From positions 248,001 to 312,000 of the IMG/VR virus record IMGVR_UViG_3300032245_001860: 64,000 nt of DNA. One strand, written 5' to 3'. The position numbers and the translations under genes were made by a program. How positions within the stretch are numbered: the stretch's first letter is position 1; the number at the start of each line of letters is the position of its first letter. Under the pieces are notes generated by a model. It was not told the origin of the DNA. It did not search any database and saw only the letters and a program-made list of their open reading frames with translations. Below are positions 2,541-50,043 of the stretch, one piece after another.

Positions 2541-5537
2541 ATGGCCGATTTTTACATAGTACCCCCCAGATTAACAGTTGGTACATTTGATAGAGCAAAT
2601 GTTGTCAATAGTATCAACTCCTTAAAAGGAGATTTGACATTTATTGCCGATGCTAATTCTGGCATTAGAGTTGTTATATCTGGGAATACTTTTAGATTTG
2701 CCATAACAGAAAATTACTACGTTAAAAAACAAGGTGATATATATCCTAAAAACTTAGTTTTTACTCCTGAAGCTGGTTACTACGGTCTCTCTGTTGGTTC
2801 TGGAGCCGCTGATCCTGGAACTGGTGCAACTGGTGGTTTGTTTTTCAATACCACATCAAGTTTGCTGAAAGTTTATAATGGCTCTTCGTGGGGAGAAATT
2901 ACTGGTTCAGGCATTACTCAAGGTGCAGCTGACTTAAGATATCTTAAATTAGATGGCACTAATACCCCAACTGCGAATATTTCGATGGGGTCTGCATTAC
3001 TCAGGCTTGCAAACCTTACTACTCAAGCTCTTCCTGGTACAACTGGTCAGATGTTTTTCAATACATCTACAGGAAGAATTAATGTTTATAATGGCACCTA
3101 CTGGGATGATGTTGGTTTAGGTGTTACAAGCATTCAAATTGGTTTTGGTTTAACTTCTACTCAAAATCCAATCGTTCAATCTGGTACTGTTTCTGTTGAC
3201 CTTACTGCAAACTATACATGGACAGGAACTCATAATTTTACAAGTCCAGTTACATTTTCTGCAGCTGGTCAGTCATTCAATATATCTAAGTTATTTATAT
3301 CTGGACAATCTGCTGGCGACTTAATTTATTTCAATGGCACAAACTGGACAAGGTTTGGTATTGGTTCAACAAGTCAAGCTTTAGTAGTTGATTCTTCAGG
3401 GTCTGGAATCACATGGGGAGCTGCCTTAAGTACTTCCGCTGGTTTAGGACTATCTACATTAAATGGTATTGGAACAACAGAACAATTCTTTGCTGTTGGA
3501 ACAAGTGGCTCTTTATTCAATATATCTTCTTTTGGATCCACACATACTTTCAACATTCCAATTGCCGGTACAGGAGCTACAGGTTTAGTTTCAACTGGCG
3601 TACAGACATTCACTGGCGCTAAAACTTTTGATACTACCTTAACTGTTAGTGCATTTACTGGTTCTGCATCAACTACTACTGGCGCATTAATTGTAAATGG
3701 TGGAGTTGGTATAGGCGGAAGTATATTTACATCCAGTTCCTATGCAAGCTCTATTTCTGGTGTTGTTCTTAGCAATGGAGTTATAACATCTGGTTCATGG
3801 GCTGGCTCAACAATAACAGGTAGATATGGTGGTACTGGTTACACATCTTACACCAAAGGTGATTTGCTTGTTGGAGCTGGTGGAACATTTGTCAAACTTC
3901 CAGTAGGTTCTGATTCATATGTTTTAGTTTCAAGTTCTTCAACAGATGCTGGAGTAGCTTGGACAACACCTACAAGCATAGGAAGCACAACTATTGGTAC
4001 TCCGACAGATGGTCTGTACACTGATGGATTCTTTACTTCTTGGACAAATTCTACCACAATTGCTAATGCTTTAGATGACATAAATGAATTACTTTCTCAA
4101 ATAGCTCCTGCAAGACCAGGATATTTGACAAGTACAAGTTTGACAGCAACTTCTGTACCAACTTATTACACTGTTGGAATTTCTGCTGGATTAGGCACTG
4201 AATGGTATCAGGCTGGATATGGCACAGGTTCCAGCATCACAAGATATTATTTGTCAGGTGCTCATACATTATCTACAGCAAATACATCAACAGCATTCTC
4301 TGCTGGAACTTTGACAACTTCAACATATGGAACTATCTATTTCAATAGATATAATTATTTGACTCCTGGCGGTGGCGGGGTAGGCACAATTGACTTGACT
4401 ACCAATTATGCTATCAACTACACTAATAACAACCTTAGATTGACAGCTTTAGGTGCATATAATACAATTTGGACCAAAGCTAATGCACAAATAAATGCCT
4501 ACACTCAGCCAAACTCGGGTTATGAGGGTGTTTATATTGCTCATACAGAAAATAGTCAATTTACAAATACATATGAAATGTGGAAAGATTCATGGTCATC
4601 TTCGAATCCAAGTCCATCTTTCTCTCAATCTGCCACAGCTTCTACATATTCACAAACTTTAAGATTTCTTTCTGGTATTGGTTACTATACTACTGGAACT
4701 GGTTTTAGTGTTTATTTTAAGGGAGCAGCTGGAATATTTAGCAGTTGTTATAATACCACTCAAGTTTATGCAATTTCTGCAACAGGTTTAGTTACAGCTA
4801 CTGGCACAACTTCAAACCCACATTATGCAGGAGAACTTGATAAATCAGGCAATAATCACGTTAGAGTTACATTAAACTCTGCAAGTGCATCTTCATTCAA
4901 CAAATATATTACAGCAACAATATACAAAGCGCATGGCACAACTGCTGCATCAAATGCAATTATAGGTAGAGCAATTAATACATATACTACAACTTCCACT
5001 GACACATTTGAAGGATTCCAAGACGAAGCAAGAAGACTTGTAATTGGCACAGGTATCGCATTTACATCAAATATTGATATGGCAAACGGGAATTTGCAGG
5101 TCAGATCTGGAACATTAAGTTATCCTCTTGCTGCAGATTATGATACTGAATATGGTGGAACACACACATTTACAGGTGATCAAGAATACCAAAGATATTT
5201 TTACAAAACATCTGCAAGTACTGGACAGCTTTCTTTAGGTGGTTTTACGGCTTCTAATATTTCAGCGTATGGCACAGGAAGTGTGAATTTACTTCTTTAT
5301 TTAGAAAGCGACAACAAATATTTTGATTTAGGAGTTTTGCAAGGATCTAATGCAAATGACGGTTCTTCAAGAGCTCAAGCTATTTCTGCAAAGGTAGCGA
5401 CATCAGGAAGTGGTGTCTCATGGTCCTTTGGAGTTTATAGCACTGGTGTAAGTGGAGCTGGAAATTCTGGCAGATATCGTGCAATTGTTATTTATAAAAA
5501 TAACACCTATTCAATGACAAGTATAACGAGTTCATAA
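2541..5537 (+). CDS. large virion fibre/appendage protein (998 aa)
   Basis: GxxFFNTxxxxLxVYNGxxW fibre motifs; shares the YGGTGYTxYTKGDLLVGAG and THTFNIPIAG modules with downstream giants. Confidence 0.75.
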   Translation: MADFYIVPPRLTVGTFDRANVVNSINSLKGDLTFIADANSGIRVVISGNTFRFAITENYYVKKQGDIYPKNLVFTPEAGYYGLSVGSGAADPGTGATGGLFFNTTSSLLKVYNGSSWGEITGSGITQGAADLRYLKLDGTNTPTANISMGSALLRLANLTTQALPGTTGQMFFNTSTGRINVYNGTYWDDVGLGVTSIQIGFGLTSTQNPIVQSGTVSVDLTANYTWTGTHNFTSPVTFSAAGQSFNISKLFISGQSAGDLIYFNGTNWTRFGIGSTSQALVVDSSGSGITWGAALSTSAGLGLSTLNGIGTTEQFFAVGTSGSLFNISSFGSTHTFNIPIAGTGATGLVSTGVQTFTGAKTFDTTLTVSAFTGSASTTTGALIVNGGVGIGGSIFTSSSYASSISGVVLSNGVITSGSWAGSTITGRYGGTGYTSYTKGDLLVGAGGTFVKLPVGSDSYVLVSSSSTDAGVAWTTPTSIGSTTIGTPTDGLYTDGFFTSWTNSTTIANALDDINELLSQIAPARPGYLTSTSLTATSVPTYYTVGISAGLGTEWYQAGYGTGSSITRYYLSGAHTLSTANTSTAFSAGTLTTSTYGTIYFNRYNYLTPGGGGVGTIDLTTNYAINYTNNNLRLTALGAYNTIWTKANAQINAYTQPNSGYEGVYIAHTENSQFTNTYEMWKDSWSSSNPSPSFSQSATASTYSQTLRFLSGIGYYTTGTGFSVYFKGAAGIFSSCYNTTQVYAISATGLVTATGTTSNPHYAGELDKSGNNHVRVTLNSASASSFNKYITATIYKAHGTTAASNAIIGRAINTYTTTSTDTFEGFQDEARRLVIGTGIAFTSNIDMANGNLQVRSGTLSYPLAADYDTEYGGTHTFTGDQEYQRYFYKTSASTGQLSLGGFTASNISAYGTGSVNLLLYLESDNKYFDLGVLQGSNANDGSSRAQAISAKVATSGSGVSWSFGVYSTGVSGAGNSGRYRAIVIYKNNTYSMTSITSS

Positions 5538-5538
5538 T

Positions 5539-8500
5539 ATGTCCTGGTCACAACAAGATTTAAGTTTCAAAAAGCTATCTAATAAAAGAGTAACCACAAG
5601 CACTGGCAAAGGTTTACCTGAAGAAAAAGGTGCGTCTACTCTTGAACTATATTTACCAGATATAAAAACAGAATTAATACCAGGAACAGGCAACACAGCT
5701 ACTGGTTTGAATGGTGTTTTGTATTATTATGGTCCGACTGCTGCATTTGGGCAAACATTAGTAGTTGATACATCTGTACCTGGAAACTTAACTTGGTTTG
5801 CTTCATCTGGTTATGGAAATACCACTACAGCAAATGATGGTTCTGCTGGATCTGAATCACAAAGATTATTTAATTGGGTTTCAGATAAATATGATGCTTT
5901 TGGCACTGTATCTGGCGCTGGTTATGAAATTAAGCTTTATGATGCTTCTAATAACTTAATTACAAAATCAGATGCTTCTAACTGGTTATTTGACTATCAA
6001 ACTGGCATTCTTATGTTCAATAATGCCACTTTATCAAATGGCAATCCAGTTTCTACATCAGGACCATATAAGATTGTCGGATGGAGATATGTTGGTCAAA
6101 AAGGCATAATTCCAGCGTATTATGGTGGTTCTGGATATACAACATACACAAAGGGTGACCTTTTAGTTGGTGCTGGTGGAACATTTATTAAATTAAATGT
6201 TGGTTCTGATAATTATGTTCTTTCAGCTGACTCAACCACAGCATCTGGTTTGAAATGGGTTGTTAACTCTGGATCTGGTTCTGGCATTTCTGTTCTCAAT
6301 GGACTTTCTGCAACTACCCAATTTTTTGCAGTAGGTACAAGTGGAAGTTTATTTAATATATCTTCATCTGGATCTACTCATACATTCAATATTCCAATTG
6401 CTGGATCAGGTGCAACAGGTTTAGTTTCGACAGGTTCTCAGACTTTTGCTGGTCAAAAAACATTTACTTCTCCAATTTTAGGAGATCTTTCTGGTACTGC
6501 AACGACTGCTGGATTTGCCACAACAGCTGCTACAGCTCAAGGAGTTTTATCATCAATCACTGGACAGGCTGTAGATTTAAGTATTGGTCTTATAAGTGGT
6601 ACAGCGTTATCATACAGTAGTAACCTTTATTATAATCCAGCATCAGGTAGATTGGCAGCTGTAAGTTATACTGGTTCATGGGCCGGTAGTACAATCACAG
6701 GATTTTATGGTGGTACAGGATACACAACATACACCAAGGGTGATATTTTAGTTGGCGCAGGTGGAACATTTATTAAGTTAGGTGTTGGAACTGATACCTA
6801 TGTTTTAACAGCATCATCTTCATCTGCAACAGGTTTGACTTGGTCTCCTACTGCTGCTACTGGTATTACAACTCTTAATTCTCTTACAGCAACTCAACAA
6901 TATTTCTCAACAGGCACATCTGGATCCACATTTAATATTTCATCTTCTGGATCTACACATACATTTAATATACCGATAGCTGGTACTGGTACTACTGGAT
7001 TAGTTTCTACTCTTGCTCAAACATTTGCAGGAGCCAAAACATTTACAGGCGATGTAGTTATAACATCATCGACAGCTTCAACCTACATGGCAAATGGAGC
7101 TTTGACTGTAAATGGTGGAGTTGGAATATCTGGCCAGCTTTCATTCAATCAAGCTGCCATGGGATATACAGGGATTGCAACAAACCCTGTAATGGCATTT
7201 ATAGGAAGCACCAATACAGCTCCTATAACAATGACTGTTCTTTCTGATGGATCTCTTCTCTGGGAAGGCAGCTCAGGAAAACTATTTGGAATCAATAACA
7301 ATCTTTCATCAGGTTGGATTTTCAATGTTGGAGATATTTCAGGTCTTCCAATACTTAGAGCAAATGCAGATGGCACTATTGCTATGGCTGAGTTTGCTGC
7401 AAATGTTGGCATTGGTCTTTCAAATCCATCATACAAACTTCATGTTGTAGGTGATACTAATCTTTCATCTGGTTATGTTTACAGAATTAATGGTACTTCG
7501 GTTTTATCATCTACACAAGTTTTAGGACTCACTGTAAACTCTGGAAATATTACATCAGGAGCTTGGTCAGGAACAGCAATATCAGTTCCTTATGGTGGCA
7601 CTGGTCTTACATCTTACACAGTTGGTGATATTCTTTATGCTTCTGGTTCAGCAACTATTGGTAGATTAGCTGCTGGAACTGCTGGATCTATTCTTATTTC
7701 TGCTGGAGCTGGAGCAACTCCATATTATAGCAGTCCAGCATTATTTGTATCGGGAAATGCCACAACAGCTGCAAACATAAATATAGTTGCAACAACCACT
7801 GGAACTCTTTATCCTTTATTTTCAAATGTCTCTACAACTGCTTCTGGAGTTGGAGTATCTGTTGACTCAGCAATATCTTATAATGCTGCTACAGATACAT
7901 TATCTGCTGGTAAATTTAGTGGTTTAGCATCTGGTACAGCAGCAACATTTACTAATATTTATGGAACATTAACTGGTGTTGCTACAACAGCAACTAACGT
8001 AAACACTGTTTCTGCAACAGGTACAAATGCTTCACATTACTTGTTATTCTCACCAGTAAATGGCGGTTCAGGTGTAGCTTTATCAAGTGGAGCTGGCATC
8101 ACATTCAATCCATCTATTGGTCAATTAGGTTTAGGTAATGGATCAGCTATCATAAATGGTTTGTTGTTGGGCACAAGTTCTAATACCATAACAACAACTT
8201 CAGGAAATCTTACACTTAATGCTGGTGGTGGTACTGTTCTTGTCGCTGGAAATCTAAATGTCCAAGGTACAGCAACTTATATTGATTCTACTACTCAAAC
8301 AATTACAGACCCAGTTGTAGTTCTTGGCTCTGGAGCAGGCGGAACACATACAAATGTAACTGACACACAAGATAGAGGAATTGAATACAGAAGATTCTCA
8401 GGTTCTGCTATCACTGGTTTCTTTGGTCTATCAAATGCTTCAGGTAGATTTACTTTCATACCAAATGCAAATGTAACAGCTAACAATACATACACTGGCT

Positions 8501-11500
8501 CTATTGGTGTCATTGAAGCTAATATAACTGGCTCTGCAATAACAGCCACTAATTTTTATGGAACATTTGTTGGAAATTCTGCAAGTGCTACGACTGCTGG
8601 ACTTGCTACCACTGCTCAAAACCTCAACATTACAACTACAGCAACAGGAACACTTTACCCATTATTTACAAGTGTTTCTACTACAGCTTCTGGTGTTGCT
8701 GTTTCTGTTGACGGTACAGATATTTCTTACGATGCTGCTACAAATACTCTTACAGCTGGAAAGTTTAGTGGTTTAGCATCTGGTAGTGCTGCAACATTTA
8801 CAAATTTCTATGGAACGCTTACTGGAAATGTCACTGGTACATCAACAACTTCACAAAATGTAAATATAGTTTCTGCAACTACTGGAACATTCTACCCATT
8901 ATTTAGTAATATTTCCACTACTGCATCTGGTGTGGCTATTTCTGTTGACAGTGGATTATCATGGAATTCTGCAACAGACACATTGACTGCTGGTACATTC
9001 TCAGGAAATCTTTCAGCCACAGCAGCTACAGCAACAAATTTCTATGGTACTTTTGTTGGTTCTGCTACAACTTCAACAAGTTTGAATGTTGTTTTAGCTG
9101 GTACAAACGCAAGTCATCCTATATTATTCACTCCTACAGCTGGATCTGCATCGGGAGTAGCTGTTTCAACAGAATCTTCATTTGTTTACAACCCTTCTAC
9201 TGATATTCTTTCGGTATCTGGTTTAGCTGTTACATCAACAACCGCCTCTACAAACTCTTCAACTGGCGCTTTGATTGTTACTGGCGGAGTTGGTATTGGT
9301 CAATCAGTAAATATTAGTGGACGAGTTGGAATAGGCACCAATTTACTAAATGCCGCATTAAACATTCAAGTTCCATCTACTACTACATCTGGCATCATTT
9401 TGAGAGGAAATGGTTCTCAAACATCTGATGCTATTACTTATTACAGCTCTACTGGTAGCACCCAATTCGCTGTAGATGCAAATGGACGTGTCAGACTTAC
9501 TGGCATGGATGGTATCTGGAACAATAAAGTCCAGCAAAATATATTTGATGTTTCTGATGGAAGAGTAAACTGGAATCTTACTACTTGGCAATATTCATCT
9601 ATTTTTTGGGTTACGGCAAATGCAAGTATTACACAAGCATCTGGCCAACTACAATTTACCAATAGTGGCACAACATCTGTAACAGGTGTTGGTGTTGTTG
9701 CAACTGGCTGGGATACTGGTGGAGCGAACAGAGTATTTGGAATTGTTTCTCCTTCAGGTAGTGAAAGAACATATTTTAAAGGTTATGGAAACCTTGTAAT
9801 TAATCCTAATAATCCAAACGCATTGCATACTGGTTGGAATACCATGGATTTAATTACCTTGGATATTTCTGGTACGGCAAATACCTACGTAGGAAATATC
9901 ATTTTAGGTAAAGTTGAAGGCACAGAGAGATTTTCAGTTGGTCCATTCGGTAACACAAAGATTACAGTTGGTTCTGCCACCACTGCAACAGGTTTATTAG
10001 TAAAAGCAGTAGCATCACAATCTGGCAATATAATAGAAACTCAAGCTTCCACAGGTGTAACAAACTTCTATGTTTCACCAACAGGAGGCGGCTCATTCTC
10101 TGATAATCTTGAAATAAGATCAGCTAAAGAAGTTAGATTTAACAACTCTGGAAATACATTCTACACAGGTTTTAAAGCTGGATCAAATGCATCTAACACC
10201 ACTTACACTTTACCTATTGCATTCCCAGGATCAGGCACATCAGTATTGCAATCTGATTCTTCTGGTGCTTTATCTTGGGTAGGTGTAGTTGGAAGTGCAT
10301 CTACAGCGCAAAACATAAATATAGTTGCAGCAAATACAAACTCTGCTCATCAATTAGTATTTACTCCAGCAAGTGGTTCAGGTTCAGGTGTTGCAGTTTC
10401 TTCAAGAACAACATTAAACTTCAATCCTTCTACTGATATTCTTTCAGTTTCTGGTTTAGCAGTCACAGCATCCACAGCTTCAACTAACTCTTCTACTGGC
10501 GCTCTGATAGTAACTGGCGGAGTTGGTATTGGCGGAACAATTTACACTGCTACTGATCTTAATGTAGGAAATTCAACTACTGGAAGATTGTATTTTAGCC
10601 AAGCAACATTAGGATCTGCTGGAACTACTGTCATTCCTTCGATGGCGTTTATTGGAACAACAAACTCTCCAATAACTTTATCTGTTCTTACTGATAACTC
10701 ACTTTCATTTGATGGTAGTTCAGGTCAGTTATTTTCTATAAATAACAACCTTTCTACAGGTTGGATATTTGCTGTAAACGATATATCTGGTTTACCATTA
10801 ATCAGAGCAAACGCCGATGGTACTGTTGCCATGGGAGAGTTTGCTGGAAATATTGGTATTGGAATTTCAAATCCATCATACAAGTTACATGTTGTTGGAG
10901 ATACAAATCTTTCTTCTGGATATGTATACAGAATTAATGGTACTTCAGTTTTATCTGCAACTTCATTAGGTACTGGGGTCACTAATTCTTCACTTACTGC
11001 TGTTGGGACAATTACTACTGGTACATGGGCAGGAAGTACAATTACTGGCCTTTATGGCGGTACTGGATACACTAACTATACTGCTGGTGATATTCTTGTT
11101 GGAGCTGGCGGAACCTTCATCAAATTAAATGCTGGCTCTTCCAACTATGTATTGACATCAAATGGATCTGGCACAATACCATCTTGGCAAGCAGTTCCTC
11201 CGTCTGCTGCATCTTCTGTTGCAGTATCACCTACCACAACCAATTCTTCTTTCTCTATTACAGTAGTTAATAGTGCAAGTGGCTCAGGTTTAGGTCTCTC
11301 TACAATTGCATCTTTTGTAATCAATCCATCCACTGGCATACTTTCAGTTTCTGGTTTAGCAGTCACATCATCTACTTCATCTACAAGTTATTCTACTGGT
11401 GCCTTAATTGTCACAGGTGGTGTAGGAATAGGAGGAAGTTTATACACTTCTTCTTCATTCGCAGATTCTATATCAGGTGTAGTCCTAAATAATGGTGTAA

Positions 11501-12861: not shown

Positions 12862-12862
12862 A

Positions 12863-13714: not shown

Positions 13715-13727
13715 ATAGAGAGAAAAA

Positions 13728-23848: not shown

Positions 23849-23850
23849 TT

Positions 23851-25250: not shown

Positions 25251-25334
25251 GACATTTTACATTCCATGAAGAAATATTTTATAACACAAATAGCGAATAA
25301 ATAAGAGAAAAGAAAAAATTCTTTAGGTTTCTTT

Positions 25335-26093: not shown

Positions 26094-26108
26094 TTTAGGG
26101 GCAAAGTT

Positions 26109-30776: not shown

Positions 30777-31033
30777 TGCATAAATTCAGAATTTATTTGC
30801 CAACAAATAAAAATGCAGCTTGGCTTGTAATTGAGGAAGGAAATATAAATATTGAAGCTGGAATCAGATTCATATACAACTTCCTCGATTACAACGAGCA
30901 AACTCTTGACCGAAATTTATTTATAATTAACGGTGATGATTTTGCAGCAATAGGACGAAGTGGTAAAGATACAAGAATTGCAATATTAGAGTTATTGATG
31001 GAAACCACTGGTGCAATTTTAGTGAAGGAATAA
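30776..31033 (+). CDS. small hypothetical protein between fibre genes (possible assembly factor)
   Basis: 85 aa, TAATG-coupled to the upstream fibre; function inferred from position only. Confidence 0.6.
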   Translation: MHKFRIYLPTNKNAAWLVIEEGNINIEAGIRFIYNFLDYNEQTLDRNLFIINGDDFAAIGRSGKDTRIAILELLMETTGAILVKE

Positions 31034-31039
31034 TATTAG

Positions 31040-34000
31040 ATGGCAACAGATGTCATTATTGACCCAGCCAATGGTCAGATATATTGGAATGATGGCACTG
31101 GATCACCTCAATCTATTTCTATCGGTGGTAATGCTCAAGATGTAATTAATGTTACAGGCTATAGTGCTGCCTTTTCACCTGGATCTACACCTGCAGCATC
31201 TGTAGCAGGAGTTCTTGTAAAATTTACTGATGCAGCAACTGGAACCCTAACTCCTGGCACTAATGCTTACGAGTTAGGGTCTGGTTCTTTAAGATGGAAA
31301 ATATTTGGCACTACCACAAATATTTCCGATAATGCTTCTGCTTTAGGTACTAACACCTTTTCATTAACTACTGGTTTAGTGCAAGTCAATGGCGGAATTG
31401 CAATCTCAGGCAATGTTGGCATTGGACGAACACTATTTTATTATAATCCAAACGACCCAAGATATTTTGTAGGCTTTAGATCTTCTGCTTCTTTAGCGAG
31501 TACACAGGATTATATATTGCCACTCGCCTATCCAGCTACAGGATCTTCTGTTTTACAATCTGACACTGCTGGTACTTTGACATGGGTTCCTATGACAACC
31601 AGTGGAGCAGCATCTGGTGTTACTGCACAAAATATAAATATTGTAAGTGCAACTACTGGAACATTTTTTCCTTTATTCACTAATACATCATCTACAGCTA
31701 ATGGTATTTCGGGTGTAGCAGTTTCTGTCGATAGTAATTTCTCTTTTGATGCTGCAAGTAATGTATTAGTTGTTGATGGTGCTACTTTAGGAGGCTTGGG
31801 ATTAACTACCACTCTTGCTTCTTTTGATATTGGCAACACATCATCAATAGCTCAAACTTTAAACTTTTCAAATACAACTACTGGACAAGTTCAATATAAT
31901 TTTGGCACTGCTTCTGCAAGTGCTTCTACAGCTACATTCTTTGGATCAGTCAACTCCAATAGAATGATCTTAAATGTAAACTCTGCTGGTAACTTATATA
32001 TCCAAACAAACCAAGTTAACGCAAGAGTCAGATTATTTCAAAACAATACAACTGGTAACGTATCTATATTTGGCACTGGTGGTGGAACCTTATACTTAGG
32101 TGAAGATACCATCACAAATAATGCTGATATTTCTATCAGAGGATCAGTTCTTAATGGTGGTGGTGGAAATGTTAGAGCTGCTATATTCACACTTTCTACA
32201 GCAACCTCAAATGGGTCAGGTATTGGCGGAACTTTAGTTTTTCAAACAAGTACATCAGGCAATGCTACAGCTAATTTGCCTAATGCTCTCAGAACAAGAT
32301 TGAGAATTGAAGGTGCTGCAACTGGTACTTCAAACCTTGAAAGTATTATAATTTTAGGTGATGCCACTTCTGGCACTGCTTGGTCATCATATTTAAGAGG
32401 GGTTGATGCTTCTGGTACTGATGTTGAAGCTGGCGAAATTCAAATTCAAGCAGGTAGATCAACAGGTACAGGAGCTGCAAGAGGAATAAGCTTTTATGTT
32501 TCTCCTTCTGGTACAACTTCCTCTACCATAAATGCTGCAAGTCAAATAGCAAGATTTTCCTCAACTGGTTTTACTATTTACTCAACTACTAATGCTACAT
32601 CTACCACTTCAGGAGCATTGATTGTTACTGGTGGTGTTGGTATTGGTGGCTCTATATTCTTAGGGAGCCAATTAACTCAAACTTATACTCCTGTAACAGG
32701 TGCAGGATTAGATCATTCTGTGTTTTTGCAGAGTAACCCATTTCCTACCAATGTCGGTGCAGTAATTCAAGTTGGATTTGGAACTGCTTGGGATGGGTCT
32801 ACTGCTGGATTTTTTAATGGATCTCCTAATGGTACATGGTTAGGAATTAGTGCTGCAACAGCAAACACAGCTGATTTCTTAAGTTTTCAAGAAAATGGAA
32901 CATCGAGATTTACTGTAGGTGCTGGCGGAACAACAAGAATTGCAGCTACAAATACAGCAACATCCACTACTTCTGGAGCTTTAATTGTTTCTGGTGGTGT
33001 GGGTATTAATGGAAATGCATTTATTGGCGGAACTACTACGATAACAAACACCACCTCTTCAACTGGTAATTCAACTGGTGCGTTTGTTGTATATGGTGGC
33101 ACAAATATTGGCGGTAATGCATTCATCGGTGGCACCACTGTAGTTCTCAATACGACAACTTCAACAAGTACAGGTACTGGCGCTTTAGTTGTTAGAGGTG
33201 GCGCAGGAGTAGCTGGTACATTAAATGTTGGGACTAACGTAGTTGTAGGAGCTCTCAATTATGCAGCAACAAATGTTTTGGGAGCATTCCAATCAAGTGT
33301 CAATAGCTTTAATCAGTTTATTGTCCAAAATACGAATAATGGTTCGTCTGCTTCCGCTGACTTTGTTTTAAATAATGATTTATCTTCTGACGCAGCATAT
33401 TATGCAAATTTGGGAATGAATTCCAGTGGCTGGGCAACTACAACATCGCCTTTCAATACAGCTAATGCAACTTATTTAACTGCAACTACTGGAGATCTTG
33501 TTTTAGGTACAACTACTGCTAATGCTATTAGAATTGGTACTGGCGGGACAATATTTGATACAATTAATATCAATGCTGCTGGTACTGCTGTATCTATAAC
33601 ACCAGCTACAGCGTCTGGAACCACATCTACTGGTGCATTAACAATAGTTGGTGGTGTAGGTATTGGCGGAAGTGTCAATATTGGCAAAACTCTCAATTTA
33701 TGGAATCCTGCTTACACATTCTCAACCAATTTAGCATCTGGCGCAGTTACAGCAACTACAACTTATATTTTACCAACTGCATACCCCTCTGGTACTGGAA
33801 CTTCATATCTTTCAGCAAGTACAACAGGTGTAATGGCTTGGGTAGCAGCTCCTACAAGTGGAGGCGGTACTCCTGGTGGTTCTACAAGACAAATTCAGTA
33901 CAACAATGCTTCATCTTTTGCTGGCGCTGGTGGATTTGAATTTACAACAGGTGGTATAGCAAATACTGTTTCAATATTTTCAACTTCTGGAACAGGATAT

Positions 34001-34435
34001 ACAGGTGGACTGTGGATCAATACAATAAATGGTTCAACTACAAGGGTTGGTATTGGACTTTCAAACCCACAATTTGAACTTGAAATTAATGGTGAAATAT
34101 CAGCTACCAATAAAAGCTTTGTAATTGATCATCCTACTAAGCCTGACATGAAACTCCGATATGGCTCATTAGAAGGCCCTGAAAATGGAGTTTATGTCAG
34201 AGGAATATTAATTGGCAATAATATCATAGAGACACCTGATTATTGGGTTGGTTTAGTTGATCCTAACACATTTACTGTGAATCTTACTCCAATAGGAAAA
34301 TTTGCTCATTTATATGTTGAAAAAATAGAAGATTATAAAGTTTATGTTGGCAATAGTAGCGCAACTAATATCCATTGTTTTTATACTATCTGGGCTGAAA
34401 GAAAAGATATTCCTAAACTTGTGACGGAGTATTAG
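31040..34435 (+). CDS. large modular fibre protein (1131 aa)
   Basis: Shared modules (GALIVxGGVGI, GMNSSGWAxTTS also in 13728); C-terminal KSFVIDHP...YGSLEGPENGVYVRG. Confidence 0.8.
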   Translation: MATDVIIDPANGQIYWNDGTGSPQSISIGGNAQDVINVTGYSAAFSPGSTPAASVAGVLVKFTDAATGTLTPGTNAYELGSGSLRWKIFGTTTNISDNASALGTNTFSLTTGLVQVNGGIAISGNVGIGRTLFYYNPNDPRYFVGFRSSASLASTQDYILPLAYPATGSSVLQSDTAGTLTWVPMTTSGAASGVTAQNINIVSATTGTFFPLFTNTSSTANGISGVAVSVDSNFSFDAASNVLVVDGATLGGLGLTTTLASFDIGNTSSIAQTLNFSNTTTGQVQYNFGTASASASTATFFGSVNSNRMILNVNSAGNLYIQTNQVNARVRLFQNNTTGNVSIFGTGGGTLYLGEDTITNNADISIRGSVLNGGGGNVRAAIFTLSTATSNGSGIGGTLVFQTSTSGNATANLPNALRTRLRIEGAATGTSNLESIIILGDATSGTAWSSYLRGVDASGTDVEAGEIQIQAGRSTGTGAARGISFYVSPSGTTSSTINAASQIARFSSTGFTIYSTTNATSTTSGALIVTGGVGIGGSIFLGSQLTQTYTPVTGAGLDHSVFLQSNPFPTNVGAVIQVGFGTAWDGSTAGFFNGSPNGTWLGISAATANTADFLSFQENGTSRFTVGAGGTTRIAATNTATSTTSGALIVSGGVGINGNAFIGGTTTITNTTSSTGNSTGAFVVYGGTNIGGNAFIGGTTVVLNTTTSTSTGTGALVVRGGAGVAGTLNVGTNVVVGALNYAATNVLGAFQSSVNSFNQFIVQNTNNGSSASADFVLNNDLSSDAAYYANLGMNSSGWATTTSPFNTANATYLTATTGDLVLGTTTANAIRIGTGGTIFDTININAAGTAVSITPATASGTTSTGALTIVGGVGIGGSVNIGKTLNLWNPAYTFSTNLASGAVTATTTYILPTAYPSGTGTSYLSASTTGVMAWVAAPTSGGGTPGGSTRQIQYNNASSFAGAGGFEFTTGGIANTVSIFSTSGTGYTGGLWINTINGSTTRVGIGLSNPQFELEINGEISATNKSFVIDHPTKPDMKLRYGSLEGPENGVYVRGILIGNNIIETPDYWVGLVDPNTFTVNLTPIGKFAHLYVEKIEDYKVYVGNSSATNIHCFYTIWAERKDIPKLVTEY

Positions 34436-34436
34436 T

Positions 34437-35168
34437 ATGGGTCACTATTTTAACCCCAATATTCCAAAAGAAAATTTTCATTGGGCAGTTGATGCAGCAA
34501 ATATTCGTTCTTATAATGGAACTGGAACTGTCTGGTTTGATGTTGTTGATGCTAACAATTTAACTTTGACTAATACTCCAACATTCTCATCTTTAGGAGC
34601 AACTTCTAATTTTGCTTTCAATGGCTCAACGCAATATGCAGTAAATTCTTCTTTGATTAGTCCAGCTTTAATTCAAGGACCAATTACTGTCAATGTAATT
34701 TTTTCTCCAAATACTCTTACTGGCACCCAAAATGTATTTTCTTTATTTGACAATGTAAACAGGGCATTGCAAATTGGTTACAACGGAACAACAGGAGCTG
34801 TTTGGAAGTTTGGCGGAACATCATTAGTAACTTACAATTATGCTGGTGTTGGAACAGTATGGCATGTTACATACACATGTGATGGATCTAATAATTCCAA
34901 AGTTTATGTAAATGGTCAATTAAATAACTCTGGTGTTGTCGCTACTGATACAGGTACACCAGTTTATTACACTGTTGGTACTTATGGCGCTGGTGTAGGC
35001 CAGTTTTTTAATGGCAAAGTATATTATGCTTCTATACATAAAAAAGTATTTACAGATAGAGAAGTGGCTTCTATGTGGCATGCGCTAAGAAGAAGATATG
35101 GTTATGCAGGAATTGGTATTACGCCTGTTGGTGATGCTGTCGTTGGCGGACTCCAAGGAGGCCAATAA
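34437..35168 (+). CDS. LamG/ConA-like protein, array 2 copy 1
   Basis: VDAANIRSYNGTG...FNGSTQY...WHVTY...VYVNG. Confidence 0.75.
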   Translation: MGHYFNPNIPKENFHWAVDAANIRSYNGTGTVWFDVVDANNLTLTNTPTFSSLGATSNFAFNGSTQYAVNSSLISPALIQGPITVNVIFSPNTLTGTQNVFSLFDNVNRALQIGYNGTTGAVWKFGGTSLVTYNYAGVGTVWHVTYTCDGSNNSKVYVNGQLNNSGVVATDTGTPVYYTVGTYGAGVGQFFNGKVYYASIHKKVFTDREVASMWHALRRRYGYAGIGITPVGDAVVGGLQGGQ

Positions 35169-35836
35169 TGGGTGGTGGTGTTGGTCCAGTAGGACAAGCA
35201 TTAGAAAATGTTGTTGTGAGAATTGATGCTGTTAACGCCAATTCATATTCAGGATCGGGAACAACTATTAACTCTTTACTTAATTCACAAACATTAAGCT
35301 CAAGTGGTGTGACTTTCATATCGGCAAAAGGCGAAAGCGTGTTTGTTTTTGGTGGCTCAGGATATGTTACATCATCTAATAATACTGGAGTATCAGGAAC
35401 TCAAAACAAAACCATGGCAGCATGGGTTAGATTTGGAACTAAAGGCACTCAAGGAAGTATGTCAACAGGTGCAAATGGTGCAGGTACAGGGATGGCATTG
35501 GCAACTTCAAGCAGTGTCATATTGTTAGGTTATGGCAATTCTGGCACATTAACTACATATTCTTATAATGCTCATCAATGGTATTACTTGGTATATACAA
35601 GTAGCTTAGTTTCTGGCTCAACCCATAATATTCAGTTGTATGTAAATGGTGGTTTAGCTCATTCTGCATTAGTTCCAAATATCAACTTGACAAATAATTC
35701 TCTACGAATTGGTTGTGACAATAGTGGTTTTGGCATGAGTGGTTTCATCTCAAGAGCAAATTTTTACAATAAAAGTTTATCGCCAAGAGAAATACAAAAG
35801 AACTATCAAAATTATAAAAATAGGTTTGGATTATAA
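35168..35836 (+). CDS. LamG/ConA-like protein, array 2 copy 2
   Basis: IDAVNANSYSGSG...WYYLVY...LYVNG...YNKSLSPREI; TAATG overlap. Confidence 0.75.
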   Translation: MGGGVGPVGQALENVVVRIDAVNANSYSGSGTTINSLLNSQTLSSSGVTFISAKGESVFVFGGSGYVTSSNNTGVSGTQNKTMAAWVRFGTKGTQGSMSTGANGAGTGMALATSSSVILLGYGNSGTLTTYSYNAHQWYYLVYTSSLVSGSTHNIQLYVNGGLAHSALVPNINLTNNSLRIGCDNSGFGMSGFISRANFYNKSLSPREIQKNYQNYKNRFGL

Positions 35837-35837
35837 A

Positions 35838-36524
35838 ATGGGACAAAAAGGCGGACCTAACATACCATTTGAAAATTTACAATTTGTCTTTGATCCAAGA
35901 CACCCAAGCTCGTTGTCAGGAAATTATATAACTTTAATTGATTCAATAATAGGAAGCGCTACAGGAGCTACTCTTTCTGGAAGTGGAACAACTTTAGGAA
36001 TAAATTTCTCAGCAATTTCTGATACTTTAAATTTTGGAAATATATCAAAAATTAACCTGACTGCAAACCTTACAGTTATGGGATGGATTTATCCTAAAAG
36101 TTTTGGAGGTGGAAGCAGTGGAAGGATATTTGATAAGTTCAAGACTACCGTTCCTCAATCAGGATTTGCTTTATGGATTGATAATGCTATAGGAACAAAT
36201 GCAATTGTTTATGGTACTGGGTGGACTGTTAGTACTACAGTGGCAAGATTGAGTAACCAAGTAAATTTAAATACTTGGCAACACTTTGCTGCTGTGCACA
36301 GCGGAACAACTGTTACATTTTATAAAAATGGCTCTTCTATAGGTTCAAGTTCAAGTATTACAGCTCCTACATCAGGAAGTGTTAATGCATGTATTGGAAA
36401 TAACGCTGGTGGAACAAATAATTTTGATGGAATTTTAGGTGCAGTGAGAATTTACAGTCGTGCACTGTCTGCAACAGAAATATTGCAAACCTACAATTCT
36501 ACAAAATCAAAATTTGGTTTATAA
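35838..36524 (+). CDS. LamG/ConA-like protein, array 2 copy 3
   Basis: Start moved to ATG 35838 (MGQKGGP), matching the MG start of most paralogs; WQHFAAV..FYKNG..YSRALSATEI. Confidence 0.75.
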   Translation: MGQKGGPNIPFENLQFVFDPRHPSSLSGNYITLIDSIIGSATGATLSGSGTTLGINFSAISDTLNFGNISKINLTANLTVMGWIYPKSFGGGSSGRIFDKFKTTVPQSGFALWIDNAIGTNAIVYGTGWTVSTTVARLSNQVNLNTWQHFAAVHSGTTVTFYKNGSSIGSSSSITAPTSGSVNACIGNNAGGTNNFDGILGAVRIYSRALSATEILQTYNSTKSKFGL

Positions 36525-36553
36525 AATTATTTATAATATAAGAGTACAAACAA

Positions 36554-37822
36554 ATGGCAGATTCAGATAAAAATATAAGAATTACAACCAACAAAAATAA
36601 GGCAGATCCGGCAAAACCTACAATAGTTTTTAGTGGATCTTCTGCTGGTTCGTCTGTCATCACTTTAGAAGTATTAAATGATAATACTTTATCATTTGTG
36701 TCAAATGAAGGTCAAATCTTTTCATTAGACTCAAATCTTACAGTTGGAACTATTTGGTCTGTTAATGATGTCTCAGGTGTTCCTTTAATTAGAGCCAGCG
36801 CTGGGGGCACTATTAACATGGCTGAGTATGGTGCAAATGTTGGCGTTGGTGAATCTAATCCTCTTCATAAATTAAGTGTAAAGGGTGCTTTAGCAATTGG
36901 AAGCACCAATACCAACAACTACACTATCTTTAGATTTCCAGCTGCAGGTACTGGACAAACTTATATTCTTCCAAGTAATTATCCTGGCACTGGTGTTTCA
37001 GTTTTGCAATCTGACACTGCGGGAAACCTTTTGTGGGTAGCAGCTGCAACAGGTGGTGGTTCTGGAAGTGTAAACTCTGGTACTGCTGGAAGTGTTGCGT
37101 TTTACCCAGCTAACGGAACTGCTGTTAGTGGCACAAGTTTGATACAACTTGCAAGTACTGGCACAGCTGTATCTATTTATGCAAACTTAGATTTGTATGC
37201 ACAAAACGACCTTAGATTGTGGAATTCAGGAAGTTCAAACTTCACTGGACTACAAGCTGGAGCAAACCCAACCAGTTACACATTAACTTTCCCGGCATCA
37301 GCACCAGGAGCTGGCGCTGGCTTTTCAATGCTTATGACTGATTCTACTGGGAACATGTCATTTGGTGGATTTATTCAAGGTACAGGCACTTCGCTTCTTG
37401 TTTCAGGAACTGGTGTTACAATAAGAAACAGAAGACCATTATTATTGACTTTTGCTTCTGGTTATACTCCTGCTACTGGTACAACCGCTGATGATGTAGT
37501 TCTAAGATTGCCTGAATCTTTTACAGATGGAACAACATCAGTGACGTGGGTGCCAAGAAGAGCATTTATTAGAACTGAAACTTTTTCAGCTGGTTCAACT
37601 TTGATCAATTTGCAATATTCGACGGGTACTGGTGTATTTACGTCTGTCAACCTTATAGGAGGAGCTGGTTTATCAGTTGGTGGTGCTGGTATTGCTGAAT
37701 CAAGCACAACAAACTTTACAGCTTCAACTTTAACATCAGGTACTAAGTTAAGAGTCAACTTTAGCTCTATCAACGCTGCTCACTCTGACTTTTTGATATA
37801 TCTGCAATTAGAAGAATTATAA
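36554..37822 (+). CDS. fibre-module virion protein (422 aa)
   Basis: Carries the NDVSGVPLIRA and YILPxxYPxxGxSVLQSDTAG modules seen in the giants. Confidence 0.7.
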   Translation: MADSDKNIRITTNKNKADPAKPTIVFSGSSAGSSVITLEVLNDNTLSFVSNEGQIFSLDSNLTVGTIWSVNDVSGVPLIRASAGGTINMAEYGANVGVGESNPLHKLSVKGALAIGSTNTNNYTIFRFPAAGTGQTYILPSNYPGTGVSVLQSDTAGNLLWVAAATGGGSGSVNSGTAGSVAFYPANGTAVSGTSLIQLASTGTAVSIYANLDLYAQNDLRLWNSGSSNFTGLQAGANPTSYTLTFPASAPGAGAGFSMLMTDSTGNMSFGGFIQGTGTSLLVSGTGVTIRNRRPLLLTFASGYTPATGTTADDVVLRLPESFTDGTTSVTWVPRRAFIRTETFSAGSTLINLQYSTGTGVFTSVNLIGGAGLSVGGAGIAESSTTNFTASTLTSGTKLRVNFSSINAAHSDFLIYLQLEEL

Positions 37823-39357
37823 TGAAAGTACATTTACAAAGATATAGAATACCACAAACTTTTGGTGGAGCTTTGAGATTTCTAACTGATCCGGGTTTTG
37901 GACCAGTGCAATGTGTATTAGGTTTCCATGTAAATACTGGAACAGTTTTGAACACAGGTGATGCATCAAGCAATTCTAAAGGATTTATGATTGGTCATGC
38001 AGGAACTTCCGGATCTTCTGCAGCTCCAACTACTCTAATGTGCTCATCTGGTATAGCGCATAGTAATAATTTGGCTTCAACCCAAACTACATTAAGTACA
38101 AGAAATTCTGACTGGCTTACTCAAGATAGTAATAGAACTACAAGAGTCAGATTTACAAATATTGTGTTGGGTACAGATGAAATTACCCTGGCCAATTCTG
38201 GTAAGGCTGCAGTAGGTACAACTTTTGATGACTTAATTCTCGTTATGTTTGGCGGGACTGGTTTATCTTCTGCTACAAATTACAATACTCTAAACCAAAC
38301 ATTAAATGCACTTAGAAACCAAACAGGACTTACATTTCGTCCGGATGTTGTGATTGGTTCTTGGTGTATGGATACAGCAGGTAATACAAGTGTAGCAGGA
38401 CAATCAAAATTTGGGTTTGGAGCAGTTGGTCGCACTAACAATTCTGATTCTGTATATATCGTCTACAGTGGAAACAATGCAGTAACACCAGTAGCTTGTA
38501 AAGCTGGAATTGGAACTGACATGTTATGGAAAAGAATATCAGCTTTCGGTACTGCTACAAACACTGCTTCAGCCGCATCTGGAGGCGGAGTTACAGCCTT
38601 TAATGCTGATGGTTTTGATGTTCAAACTTATAATTCTGCACAAGCGGCAGCTACTTATCAATATAACTTCACAGCCTTGAAATGTGATGAGAGAATAAAA
38701 ACAGGTTATTTTTTTACTCCAACAGGAACTGGCAGTACTTTTGTCAACTTAGGATTTGTACCTCAGTTTGTAATGGGAGCTTCTTGTGGTTCAAGTATAA
38801 TGCAATCTCAACCTGAAACAAACTTAGAAGCTCCATCATTAAGTTTATGGTTTGCACAAGGCAGTACATCTTCAAAATTTATTGAGGGCAAGGGCACAAT
38901 TACAACATCGACTGCTAACGTGACTGGAACTGGTACAGGCTCTTCATTCTTAGCTCAAATTTCTCAAGGCGATAGTATATATAATATTAATTACCAATTA
39001 GTGGGCACAGTGGCAAGTGTTGCATCTACTACTTCATTAGCTTTTACAGCCAATGCAGCCTTAACTTTATCCTCTCAAAACTATTTTATTACAAGAACAA
39101 CCAATTACACATTATACTTTGGTGATCAAATTGGTAATGCAGTACAAAAAGCATTTTGCGGTATTGCAACGTCAGCTCCAGCATTGGCAATATCATCAGG
39201 TACAGCTGTTTCAACAATTACAGCTGGACAAGTTGTTACATTTCAAGGCGATAATGGTTTTACTATAAACTACACAAATCAATATAGATTTCCACAATTA
39301 AATTGGTACATGGCAATAGAAGCTGAGCCAAGACAAAAAAGAAGACAGTCAGGATAA
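37822..39357 (+). CDS. probable virion structural protein (511 aa)
   Basis: TAATG-coupled; Ser/Thr/Gly-rich; GTITTSTANVTGTGT..F...GDSIY..VASVASTTSL motif common in tail proteins. Confidence 0.6.
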   Translation: MKVHLQRYRIPQTFGGALRFLTDPGFGPVQCVLGFHVNTGTVLNTGDASSNSKGFMIGHAGTSGSSAAPTTLMCSSGIAHSNNLASTQTTLSTRNSDWLTQDSNRTTRVRFTNIVLGTDEITLANSGKAAVGTTFDDLILVMFGGTGLSSATNYNTLNQTLNALRNQTGLTFRPDVVIGSWCMDTAGNTSVAGQSKFGFGAVGRTNNSDSVYIVYSGNNAVTPVACKAGIGTDMLWKRISAFGTATNTASAASGGGVTAFNADGFDVQTYNSAQAAATYQYNFTALKCDERIKTGYFFTPTGTGSTFVNLGFVPQFVMGASCGSSIMQSQPETNLEAPSLSLWFAQGSTSSKFIEGKGTITTSTANVTGTGTGSSFLAQISQGDSIYNINYQLVGTVASVASTTSLAFTANAALTLSSQNYFITRTTNYTLYFGDQIGNAVQKAFCGIATSAPALAISSGTAVSTITAGQVVTFQGDNGFTINYTNQYRFPQLNWYMAIEAEPRQKRRQSG

Positions 39358-49253: not shown

Positions 49254-49281
49254 ATTATATTGTTATTGATATTTTTGTCAA
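49254..49281 (-). promoter_or_regulatory. sigma70-type promoter for the large RNA
   Basis: TTGACA (49281-49276), 16-nt spacer, TATAAT (49259-49254) on the minus strand. Confidence 0.75.
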
Positions 49282-49997: not shown

Positions 49998-50043
49998 ATA
50001 TTTTTTATAAAACAATTGGCATTTGTATTTTGGATATATGAAA

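What the first reader, a model, noticed from the sequence alone, without database searches (positions are those of the whole stretch)
2541..39357. About 37-kb appendage locus assembled from a small shared module toolkit
Seen: at least seven proteins reuse the same modules in different orders. These are WAGxTxxGxYGGTGYTxYTKGDxLVGAG (2541, 5539 several times, 12863); LNxL...THTFNIPIAG...QTxxGxKTF (2541, 5539 twice, 13728); TGTFYPLF repeats (5539, 26109, 31040); D(I/V)SG(L/V)P (5539 twice, 13728, 36554); YxLP...GxSVLQS (5539, 13728 three times, 31040, 36554); a ~110-aa NLNVQGTATYIDSTTQ...RRFSGSAITGFFG block (about 8180-8520 and 28300-28640); and many STGALxVxGGVGIG units. Inference: module shuffling produces several long fibres, possibly a hairy virion with head or sheath filaments.
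Basis: partly seen in the sequence, partly recalled or inferred. Interest (0 to 1): 0.62.

Follow-up and report, generated by a model that had tools for sequence, protein, structure and literature searches.

The report
Modular fibre locus of a huge phage
A 37-kb block of a roughly 370-kb uncultivated freshwater phage encodes nine long fibre proteins built from a shared set of repeat modules, plus twelve small lectin-like proteins; related phages show the modules being swapped, so this is a large, actively reshuffled version of the familiar phage host-recognition fibre locus.

Summary
The locus (2541-39357, all + strand) holds nine fibre genes (9,154 aa) and twelve single-domain Laminin_G_3 genes in two arrays. 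The genome is a 316-kb IMG/VR record (CheckV 88%) of a tailed phage; it has a portal gene.

Fibre identity:
- One C-terminal domain matches the cyanophage Pam1 tailspike receptor-binding domain (Z 9.8) and other tailspike or fibre tips.
- A short motif matches a T5 L-shaped-fibre PHROG (1e-11).
- The 283-aa protein is predicted to form a trimer (0.91; best control 0.00).
- The lectin genes have homologues annotated as virion structural proteins in S-PM2 and a Flavobacterium myovirus.

Shuffling: six relatives keep gene order and terminal domains but differ in the number and order of shaft modules. One relative is 95-99% identical over most of the 2440-aa fibre, yet carries replaced patches and a roughly 295-aa insertion. 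A roughly 240-aa block is shared at 70-90% identity between two different fibre genes.

Where the fibres sit on the virion (tail, head or sheath) cannot be decided. It is a new variant of a known kind, of moderate interest.

The parts
2541..5537 (+). Fibre gene 1 (998 aa). Architecture: own N-terminal domain with two knob motifs, then M1-M2-M7-M1, then an own 520-aa C-terminal domain.
   Evidence: The orthologue in L014 is 97% identical. The orthologue in L046 has an extra M3-M7-M5.
5539..12861 (+). Fibre gene 2 (2440 aa), carrying 28 module copies. Order: N-domain, M1 M2 M1 M2 M7 M4 M1, M3x2 M6 M3x4, M7, unique patch, M5 M3 M7 M5 M4 M1 M3 M7 M1 knob M7 M1 knob M7, C-domain.
   Evidence: The knob motif matches phrog_3304, L-shaped tail fiber protein assembly, at 1e-11. 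Mosaic against the L014 orthologue.
12863..13714 (+). Short fibre (283 aa): M7-M1 followed by a 160-aa C-terminal domain.
   Evidence: Predicted homotrimer: ipSAE 0.91, best control 0.00, partner pLDDT 90, runs agree in at least 91% of contacts. Its C-terminal domain lies inside larger fibres in L014 and L047.
13728..18416 (+). Fibre gene 4 (1562 aa). Order: knob, M2, (M3-M7-M5) units, M4, (M7-M5) units, own C-terminal domain.
   Evidence: Orthologues are 1354 aa in L046 and 1920 aa in L047, with other module orders.
18416..25250 (+). Lectin array A: nine abutting genes holding ten Laminin_G_3 (ConA-like) domains. The gene at 22520-23848 is a tandem double.
   Evidence: Pfam PF13385 at 1e-15 to 1e-32. 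phrog_8510 virion structural protein and phrog_24074. Paralogues are 23-38% identical. Several have one-to-one orthologues in L047 and L046.
25335..26093 (+). Short fibre (252 aa): knob motif, a degenerate M1-like stretch, then the CT1 tip domain (about 25692-26093).
   Evidence: phrog_17490 at 2e-12. At least 60% identical in more than 120 protein clusters. AF2 gives pLDDT above 90 over most of residues 165-240. Best fold match is 7eea_A, the Pam1 tailspike receptor-binding domain: Z 9.8, rmsd 1.7 A, 69 residues aligned.
26109..30776 (+). Fibre gene 6 (1555 aa). Order: own N-domain, M3 x7, M6, M3 x8 (237-nt period), CT1 tip (30342-30776).
   Evidence: phrog_17490 at 8e-22. The orthologue in L040 has M3 x8, M6, M3 x13.
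30776..31033 (+). Small 85-aa ORF between the two CT1 fibres. Role unknown; a fibre assembly factor is a guess.
   Evidence: An ORF of the same size sits at the same place in L040 and L042. No PHROG match.
31040..34435 (+). Fibre gene 7 (1131 aa). Order: own N-domain, M5 M3, unique patch, (M7-M5) units, CT1 tip (33962-34435).
   Evidence: phrog_17490 at 2e-39. Orthologues are 887, 1061 and 1622 aa and carry different modules, including M1, M2 or M4.
34437..36524 (+). Lectin array B: three Laminin_G_3-type genes (34437-35168, 35168-35836, and about 35838-36524).
   Evidence: One-to-one orthologues in L042, L040 and L015.
36554..37822 (+). Fibre gene 8 (422 aa). Order: M4 at the N-terminus, M5 x2, then a jelly-roll C-terminal domain (residues about 290-422).
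   Evidence: AF2 gives block-mean pLDDT of mostly 76-92 for residues 300-422. The domain has a TNF/C1q-like jelly roll with generic matches at Z up to 8.9, including phage 7-7-1 tail fibre and the KP1 baseplate. Orthologues of 369 and 609 aa have other shafts. 363 homologues were found.
37822..39357 (+). Conserved 511-aa protein without toolkit modules; last gene of the locus.
   Evidence: Weak phrog_1591 tail fiber match at 2e-5. Present after the M4 protein in L015, L040 and L042. The Atlas search gave only unnamed viral clusters.
8107..8838 (+). Block of about 240 aa (M6 plus flanking M3) shared with 28224-28946 in fibre gene 6.
   Evidence: 70-90% aa identity in 40-residue windows and 78% nt identity over 651 nt. 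The M6 part is only 51-55% identical to the positional orthologues in L040 and L042, and M6 is absent from the fibre-2 orthologues of L046 and L047.

Best explanation
The locus encodes the host-recognition appendages of a huge, uncultivated freshwater tailed phage of about 370 kb. Nine proteins form trimeric, beta-rich fibres. Each has a gene-specific N-terminal domain, which is inferred to attach it to the virion or to another fibre. Next comes a shaft assembled from a common stock of seven repeat modules (M1-M7) and a short knob motif. Each ends in a gene-specific tip domain.

The tips are of several kinds. CT1, in three proteins, is a tailspike/fibre-type C-terminal beta-sandwich. Two proteins have TNF/C1q-like jelly rolls. 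Others have their own domains. Twelve free-standing ConA-like lectin proteins are encoded directly behind two of the fibres. They are inferred to be virion-borne carbohydrate binders that ride on, or work beside, the fibres.

Evolution works by recombination among the diverged repeats. Gene order and terminal domains stay fixed. Shaft modules are duplicated, lost, inserted, moved between genes, and whole genes are fused or split.

Shown: the modules, the architectures, the differences between relatives, and the fold and family matches. Inferred: virion location, trimer state beyond the model, lectin docking, and the effect on host range (different reach and several receptor specificities).
For: - Modules are real and confined to this locus.
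- The genome is a tailed phage: portal phrog_16240 at 2e-35. Other giant tail-type proteins lie elsewhere in the genome.
- Fibre kinship: the knob motif matches phrog_3304 at 1e-11, and there are weak tail-fiber PHROG hits for 12863 and 37822.
- The CT1 fold best matches the Pam1 tailspike receptor-binding domain: Z 9.8, rmsd 1.7 A, 69 residues, 23% identity. The next matches are the C-termini of the LKA1, K64-1 and AP22 spikes and the R-pyocin fibre. Viral models annotated as tail fiber also match.
- In L028 an M4 protein carries tail-fiber PHROG C-termini.
- The M1 profile finds 10,153 cluster representatives. The top hit has 58 copies and ends in Peptidase_S74.
- Trimer model of the 12863 protein: score 0.91, best of 3 controls 0.00. 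That mark was reached by 20 of 30 proteins solved as pairs and 1 of 23 solved as single chains.
- Lectin genes match PF13385. The homologous domain is the C-terminus of S-PM2 p176, annotated 'virion structural protein'. Free-standing homologues annotated 'structural protein' follow a 'tail fiber-like' gene in Flavobacterium phage immuto.
- Shuffling: the architectures of L014, L015, L040, L042, L046 and L047 differ. The fibre-2 orthologue in L014 is a mosaic: 95-99% identical, with patches at 26-66% and an insertion of about 295 aa. A block is shared between genes.
Against: - No virion proteomics or microscopy exists for this phage.
- No baseplate, sheath or major capsid family was detected with the Pfam models tried.
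- The flanking genes are lysis-like, an AAA ATPase and metabolic genes, not baseplate genes, so tail attachment is not shown.
- Most fibre sequence has no PHROG, Pfam or PDB match.
- The jelly-roll matches at Z 8-9 are at background level.
- AF2 monomer models are poor outside the tips.
- The trimer score is a model's confidence, not a measurement.
- No domain that would dock the lectins on fibres was identified.
Confidence: 0.75

Rival explanations
1. Hairy virion: some or most of these fibres are not baseplate tail fibres. Instead they are filaments anchored on the capsid, neck or tail sheath, as in jumbo phages phAPEC6, CBB and Atu_ph07, and act by entangling or pre-adsorbing to cells.
For: - There are nine fibre genes, more than a six-fold baseplate set needs.
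- The locus lies away from any recognisable baseplate genes.
- Other hairy jumbo phages are described in PMC5259590 and PMC6102473.
- The gene-specific N-terminal domains could fit several different anchor sites.
Against: - All informative matches are to tail fibres and tailspikes.
- tblastn of two fibres against 50,697 phage records listed no hairy jumbo phage: cyanophages, Flavobacterium phages and uncultured phages were found, and nothing.
- No head-decoration family hits these ORFs. Such domains occur in other giant ORFs of the genome.
Confidence: 0.2
2. Not virion parts: the products are made in the infected cell as secreted or surface adhesins or lectins, for example for cell aggregation, superinfection exclusion or decoying, and are not packed into particles.
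For: - The locus is flanked by non-structural genes: a CN_hydrolase, and by synteny with relatives an Fe-SOD.
- Lectin domains also occur in many cellular surface proteins.
- No direct evidence of virion association exists.
Against: - Homologues of the lectin genes and of the CT1 and M6 modules are annotated as virion structural or tail-fibre proteins in cultured phages.
- The trimeric fibre design with a tailspike-like tip is typical of virion proteins.
- Secretion signals were not examined, so that line of evidence is missing on both sides.
Confidence: 0.04
3. Artefact: the repeats and the differences between relatives come from mis-assembly of repetitive metagenomic DNA.
For: - Several relatives' contigs end inside fibre genes (L014 and L046).
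- Laying other samples' contigs gives many short-sided joints.
Against: - Repeat copies are only 60-83% identical in DNA, too diverged to collapse.
- All nine fibre frames are open over 250-2440 codons.
- Independent assemblies from different samples give the same gene order and intact frames.
- Contigs of the source run tile 26109-30776 without a mismatch.
Confidence: 0.01

Closest known systems
Mosaic tail-fibre genes of T-even and other tailed phages (gp37/gp38-type adhesin regions, side tail fibres)
   Same: Conserved attachment end, a repetitive shaft, exchangeable segments bounded by conserved motifs, and host-range evolution by recombination and domain duplication. This comparison rests on established knowledge and was not tested here.
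   Different: No sequence match to the T4 fibre families. Seven unrelated module families are shared across seven genes in one genome. The scale is larger: nine fibre genes, 9,154 aa and 37 kb. Twelve lectin genes accompany the fibres.
T4-like cyanophage virion structural / fibre-like proteins (S-PM2 p175-p177, P-SSM2 tail fiber-like protein, S-SM2 and relatives)
   Same: They share M6, CT1 (phrog_17490 and phrog_28536) and the Laminin_G_3 unit. The arrangement 'CT1 fibre, three lectin genes, M4 protein' recurs in a 177-kb contig, L028.
   Different: Only single modules match, at 27-43% identity. In S-PM2 the lectin domain is fused to the end of a protein of about 1,060 aa, whereas here it stands alone in twelve genes. 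The host genome is a different, much larger phage without detectable T4 core families.
Cyanophage Pam1 tailspike receptor-binding domain (PDB 7eea)
   Same: The C-terminal beta-sandwich of CT1 superposes at Z 9.8, rmsd 1.7 A, over 69 residues with 23% identity, clearly above the next match at Z 7.0.
   Different: Only the last 70-80 residues correspond. No beta-helix spike body or enzyme domain was detected here.
Multi-receptor-binding-protein sets of large phages (Klebsiella K64-1 / RaK2-type branched spikes; CBA120-type)
   Same: Many different receptor-binding proteins are encoded side by side in one large myovirus-type genome. This comparison rests on established knowledge. The K64-1 S2-4 C-terminus is a weak fold match at Z 6.5.
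   Different: Those are mostly enzymatic beta-helix depolymerases linked through gp10-like adaptor domains. Here the proteins are long non-enzymatic repeat fibres plus lectins, and no adaptor domain was recognised.
Hairy jumbo phages (phAPEC6, CBB, Atu_ph07)
   Same: Jumbo genome, many fibre-like products, and arrays of related genes (PMC7247149, PMC5259590 and PMC6102473).
   Different: No sequence similarity was found. The location of the present fibres on the virion is unknown.

Membership tests
Phage tail fibre / receptor-binding fibre (functional class) | Homotrimeric elongated assembly | tested here: met
   In silico only. Three copies of the 283-aa protein give ipSAE 0.91 against a best control of 0.00, with interdigitated contacts over residues 5-95.
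Phage tail fibre / receptor-binding fibre (functional class) | Homology of at least one domain to an established tail fibre or tailspike | tested here: met
   CT1 against the Pam1 tailspike receptor-binding domain at Z 9.8. The knob motif against phrog_3304 at 1e-11. The M1-rich top hit ends in Peptidase_S74.
Phage tail fibre / receptor-binding fibre (functional class) | Presence in the virion, attached to the baseplate or tail tip | not testable with these tools
   No isolate, proteome or micrograph exists. Only homologues are annotated as structural proteins.
Phage tail fibre / receptor-binding fibre (functional class) | Encoded next to baseplate or tail genes | tested here: not met
   Upstream are endolysin-like, AAA ATPase and SLT genes. 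Downstream are a CN_hydrolase and metabolic genes. This feature is usual but not obligatory; cyanophage fibre genes also lie apart.
Pfam PF13385 Laminin_G_3 (ConA-like lectin/glucanase superfamily) | Match above the curated cut-off of 27.6 bits | tested here: met
   Four of the five lectin genes scanned score 57.6-114 bits. The gene at 34437 fails Pfam but matches phrog_24074 and the paralogue profile. The other seven genes were assigned by the paralogue profile only.
T4 long tail fibre (gp34-gp37) and T4-type core | Sequence match to T4-type structural families | tested here: not met
   No Gp23, sheath, gp25-like or Baseplate_J match in the record. No T4 fibre family appears in the Pfam or PHROG scans of the fibres.
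Diversity-generating retroelement target (mutagenised receptor-binding protein) | Reverse transcriptase in the genome | tested here: not met
   No RVT_1 match in the 316-kb record, which is 88% complete.
Fibres with C-terminal intramolecular chaperone (Peptidase_S74) | A PF13884 domain at the C-terminus | tested here: not met
   No PF13884 match in any of the eight large proteins scanned. It is present in a distant M1-bearing protein.

The most novel reading that the evidence does not exclude
The locus may build a composite, possibly branched adhesion apparatus. Successive gene products would join end to end or side by side; fusion and fission of the same domains among relatives hint at such physical contact. 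The twelve free-standing lectins would dock on particular shaft modules. Module shuffling would then re-wire both reach and specificity, giving a combinatorial host-recognition system not yet described for phages. It might coat the tail or head as hairs.
Probability: 0.15. Interest if true: 0.7.

Novelty: new variant of a known kind. Interest (0 to 1): 0.5.

Why it matters
Receptor-binding fibres decide which bacteria a phage can infect. Huge phages are almost all uncultivated, so their host recognition is unknown. This locus offers three things:

- A set of seven well-delimited, unannotated fibre modules. One of them is present in more than 10,000 protein clusters, so it could become a domain model for annotating metagenomic phage fibres.
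- A natural series of relatives in which shaft length and composition vary while anchors and tips stay fixed. This is useful for learning the rules of fibre engineering.
- A conserved partnership between long fibres and arrays of stand-alone lectins, whose role in adsorption is untested.

The phage clade is common in freshwater metagenomes, so the findings bear on abundant environmental viruses.

Tried and rejected
- Near-identity DNA search of 2541-12861 against 50,697 phage records: no match.
- tblastn of the 1562-aa fibre against the same records: no match.
- Pfam on the eight large proteins: nothing except a sub-threshold BppL_N hit.
- PDB sequence searches with three fibres and with an M4 profile: nothing meaningful.
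- Genome-wide Pfam family searches for Gp23, Phage_sheath_1, Terminase_6N, GPW_gp25 and Baseplate_J: no match. The Gp23 control did not ring anywhere either, so that blank says little.
- PHROG scans of many large ORFs outside the window: mostly blank.
- Promoter and terminator scan: no more sites than in shuffled sequence.
- The AF2 monomer of the 422-aa protein did not fold M4 or M5 (pLDDT about 50), so those folds remain unknown.
- Jelly-roll matches of its tip are generic.
- Protein Atlas search for the 511-aa protein: only unnamed viral clusters.
- Diversity-generating retroelement idea: rejected, no reverse transcriptase.
- Laying contigs of three other freshwater runs on 26109-30776 gave many joints. 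Their sides are short (24-50 letters) at 80% likeness, so they were not used as evidence for copy-number variation.
- Possible membership in the 'moraphage' lineage (PMC12619734) was considered because of DnaK/DnaJ and the aquatic origin. It could not be tested from the paper's text.
- No alternative genetic code was needed.

Full report
**Context.** The window is bases 248001-312000 of a single 315,852-bp IMG/VR virus record. The record is linear, CheckV puts it at 88% complete, and its GC content is 33%. A protein identical to one from the window also sits on a 370-kb contig, so the true genome is probably about 370 kb.

The record is a tailed phage. It has a portal gene at genome 130575-132917 (phrog_16240, 2e-35). 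It also has bacterial-type replication and chaperone genes: gyrase A/B, RecA, Hsp70, DnaJ and ribonucleotide reductase. Other giant tail-type or Ig-repeat ORFs lie elsewhere in the genome. Words from the locus occur at low share in freshwater, lake and aquatic metagenomes from at least twelve studies.

**Checking the observation.** ORFs fill 2541-39357 on the + strand, mostly abutting or overlapping by a few bases.

I then built a profile for each motif class by iterated search. I scored all 31 proteins from the left 45 kb of the window together with their reversed sequences. With filters off the counts are:

| Module | Length (aa) | Copies |
|---|---|---|
| M1 (WAG...YGGTGY) | 63 | 9 |
| M2 (THTFNIPIAG) | 73 | 4 |
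| M3 (TGTFYPLF) | 79 | 28 |
| M4 (DISGLP) | 131 | 4 |
| M5 (SVLQS) | 68 | 20 |
| M6 | 121 | 2 |
| M7 (STGALxVxGGVGIG) | 38 | 25 |

No decoy was hit. Seven proteins carry modules, and no copy exists elsewhere in the record. At the DNA level the copies are 60-83% identical. M3 forms 237-nt tandem arrays.

- Twelve small genes (210-260 aa; one is a tandem double of 442 aa) lie in two arrays, 18416-25250 and 34437-36524. They are paralogues at 23-38% identity and match Pfam Laminin_G_3.
- Three proteins (25335, 26109 and 31040) end in a common domain, here called CT1, which matches phrog_17490 and phrog_28536.
- A short knob motif recurs at N-termini and inside shafts. It matches a T5 L-shaped tail fibre PHROG at 1e-11.

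**What the proteins are.** Most of the sequence has no Pfam, PHROG or PDB match. The informative matches all point to fibres and spikes.
- An AF2 model of the 252-aa protein has a confident C-terminal domain. Its best solved match is the cyanophage Pam1 tailspike receptor-binding domain (7eea_A: Z 9.8, rmsd 1.7 A, 69 residues, 23% identity). That stands clear of the next matches, which are the C-termini of other tailspikes, depolymerases and the R-pyocin fibre.
- Predicted viral structures annotated as tail fiber also match this model.
- The tip of the 422-aa protein is a TNF/C1q-like jelly roll, a trimer-forming fold, but these matches are at background level.
- Three copies of the 283-aa protein are modelled as an intertwined trimer. 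The score is 0.91 and the best of three controls is 0.00. Partner pLDDT is 90 and the runs agree in at least 91% of contacts. The mark was reached by 20 of 30 proteins solved as pairs and 1 of 23 solved as single chains. This is support, not proof.
- The M1 profile finds 10,153 cluster representatives among 1.84 billion proteins, many with numerous copies. The top hit has 58 copies in 4,745 aa and ends in the Peptidase_S74 fibre chaperone.
- M4 is the N-terminal domain of viral proteins of 142-1,803 aa in 25 viral contigs. One of these carries tail-fiber PHROG C-termini.
- The lectin genes resemble the C-terminus of S-PM2 p176, annotated 'virion structural protein'. They also resemble two free-standing 'structural proteins' that follow a 'tail fiber-like' gene in Flavobacterium phage immuto.

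**Shuffling.** Six related loci from other assemblies keep the gene order: fibre 1, fibre 2, short fibre, fibre 4, lectins..., CT1 fibres, three lectins, M4 protein, the 511-aa protein, CN_hydrolase. They also keep the terminal domains. The shafts differ.
- The fibre-7 orthologues are 887, 1,061, 1,131 and 1,622 aa long. They variously contain M1, M2 or M4.
- The M4 protein is 369, 422 or 609 aa long.
- Fibre 6 has 7+8 or 8+13 M3 units.
- The C-terminal domain of the 283-aa protein lies inside fibre 2 in L014 and inside fibre 4 in L047. In L047, fibre 2 is split in two with a lectin gene between the halves.

The closest relative, L014, is 97% identical in fibre 1. In fibre 2 it is 95-99% identical over residues 1-1200 and 1682-1881. 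It drops to 26-66% over about 1250-1580, has an insertion of about 295 aa after about residue 2060, and is 60% identical at the end. This patchwork within an otherwise near-identical gene is the signature of recent recombination.

Within the window, residues about 857-1100 of fibre 2 and 706-946 of fibre 6 are 70-90% identical (78% in DNA). The M6 part of fibre 6 is only 51-55% identical to its positional orthologues in L040 and L042. Fibre-2 orthologues in L046 and L047 lack M6 altogether. That indicates transfer of a block between two genes of one genome.

The lectin paralogues, by contrast, are old. Many have one-to-one orthologues in relatives, in a partly different order.

**Interpretation.** The best reading is a host-recognition locus made of trimeric fibres with fixed anchors and tips and recombining modular shafts, accompanied by a conserved family of lectins. 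The module toolkit is partly shared with T4-like cyanophages and other aquatic phages.

Where the fibres sit is open. The neighbouring genes are not baseplate genes, and standard tail families were not detected in this divergent genome. The 'hairy virion' idea has precedent in jumbo phages (PMC7247149, PMC5259590 and PMC6102473) but no specific support here. A diversity-generating retroelement is not involved. Mis-assembly is unlikely.

**Novelty.** Mosaic fibres and multi-adhesin sets are established. What is new here:
- the module families, none of which is in Pfam;
- the extent of sharing across seven genes;
- the direct evidence for transfer between genes and for fusion and fission among relatives;
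- the fibre-lectin partnership in a huge phage.

I rate it a new variant of a known kind, interest 0.5.

Noticed in passing
window 43435-44055 (+), 44790-45452 (+), 49278-50015 (-), 51092-51880 (-), 51823-52590 (-), 52533-53246 (-): A second family of six paralogues of about 205-260 aa (26-36% identity), unrelated to the fibres. Four of them lie in tandem on the minus strand. A relative's homologue carries only a faint DUF3431 mark.
   Followed up: partly
window 39359-40171: A carbon-nitrogen hydrolase gene (PF00795, 2.6e-16) follows the fibre locus directly here and in every relative seen. DUF2997 and DUF1257 genes come next on the other strand.
   Followed up: partly
window 30776-31033: An 85-aa ORF between the two CT1 fibres keeps the same size and place in L040 and L042. 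It has no family match and could be an assembly factor.
   Followed up: partly
genome G000:C1 130575-132917 (L007 10575-12914): The portal protein (780 aa) has a C-terminal stretch with weak HNH-endonuclease PHROG matches (residues 666-762, E 2e-4).
   Followed up: no
genome G000:C1 196051-204549 (+), 215907-224033 (-), 231102-236957 (-): Three further giant ORFs of 2,832, 2,708 and 1,951 aa lie outside the locus. One matches a minor tail protein PHROG at 2e-56. Two carry Ig-like domains of the 'head decoration / tail fiber' type. None shares the toolkit modules.
   Followed up: partly
genome G000:C1, among the 95 ORFs of alignment A1 (positions 1-248000): A RuBisCO large-chain-like gene (PF00016, 6e-33), Hsp70, two DnaJ, gyrase A and B, RecA, adenylosuccinate synthetase and UDP-galactopyranose mutase are encoded by the phage. 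The individual ORFs were not located.
   Followed up: no
window 3780-3968, 6082-6264, 6661-6849, 7546-7734, 11008-11193, 11497-11685, 12073-12261, 13037-13225: The 63-aa M1 module has no Pfam model, yet its profile finds 10,153 cluster representatives (1,521 at E<=1e-10) in 1.84 billion proteins, with up to 58 copies per protein. It is a candidate for a new domain family of fibre shafts.
   Followed up: partly
window 30321-30632: When contigs of three other freshwater runs are laid on fibre 6, summed depth is highest over the CT1 tip (92-266 in the 30321-30476 bin, against mostly 0-115 elsewhere). This suggests the tip domain is shared by many more phages than the shaft.
   Followed up: no
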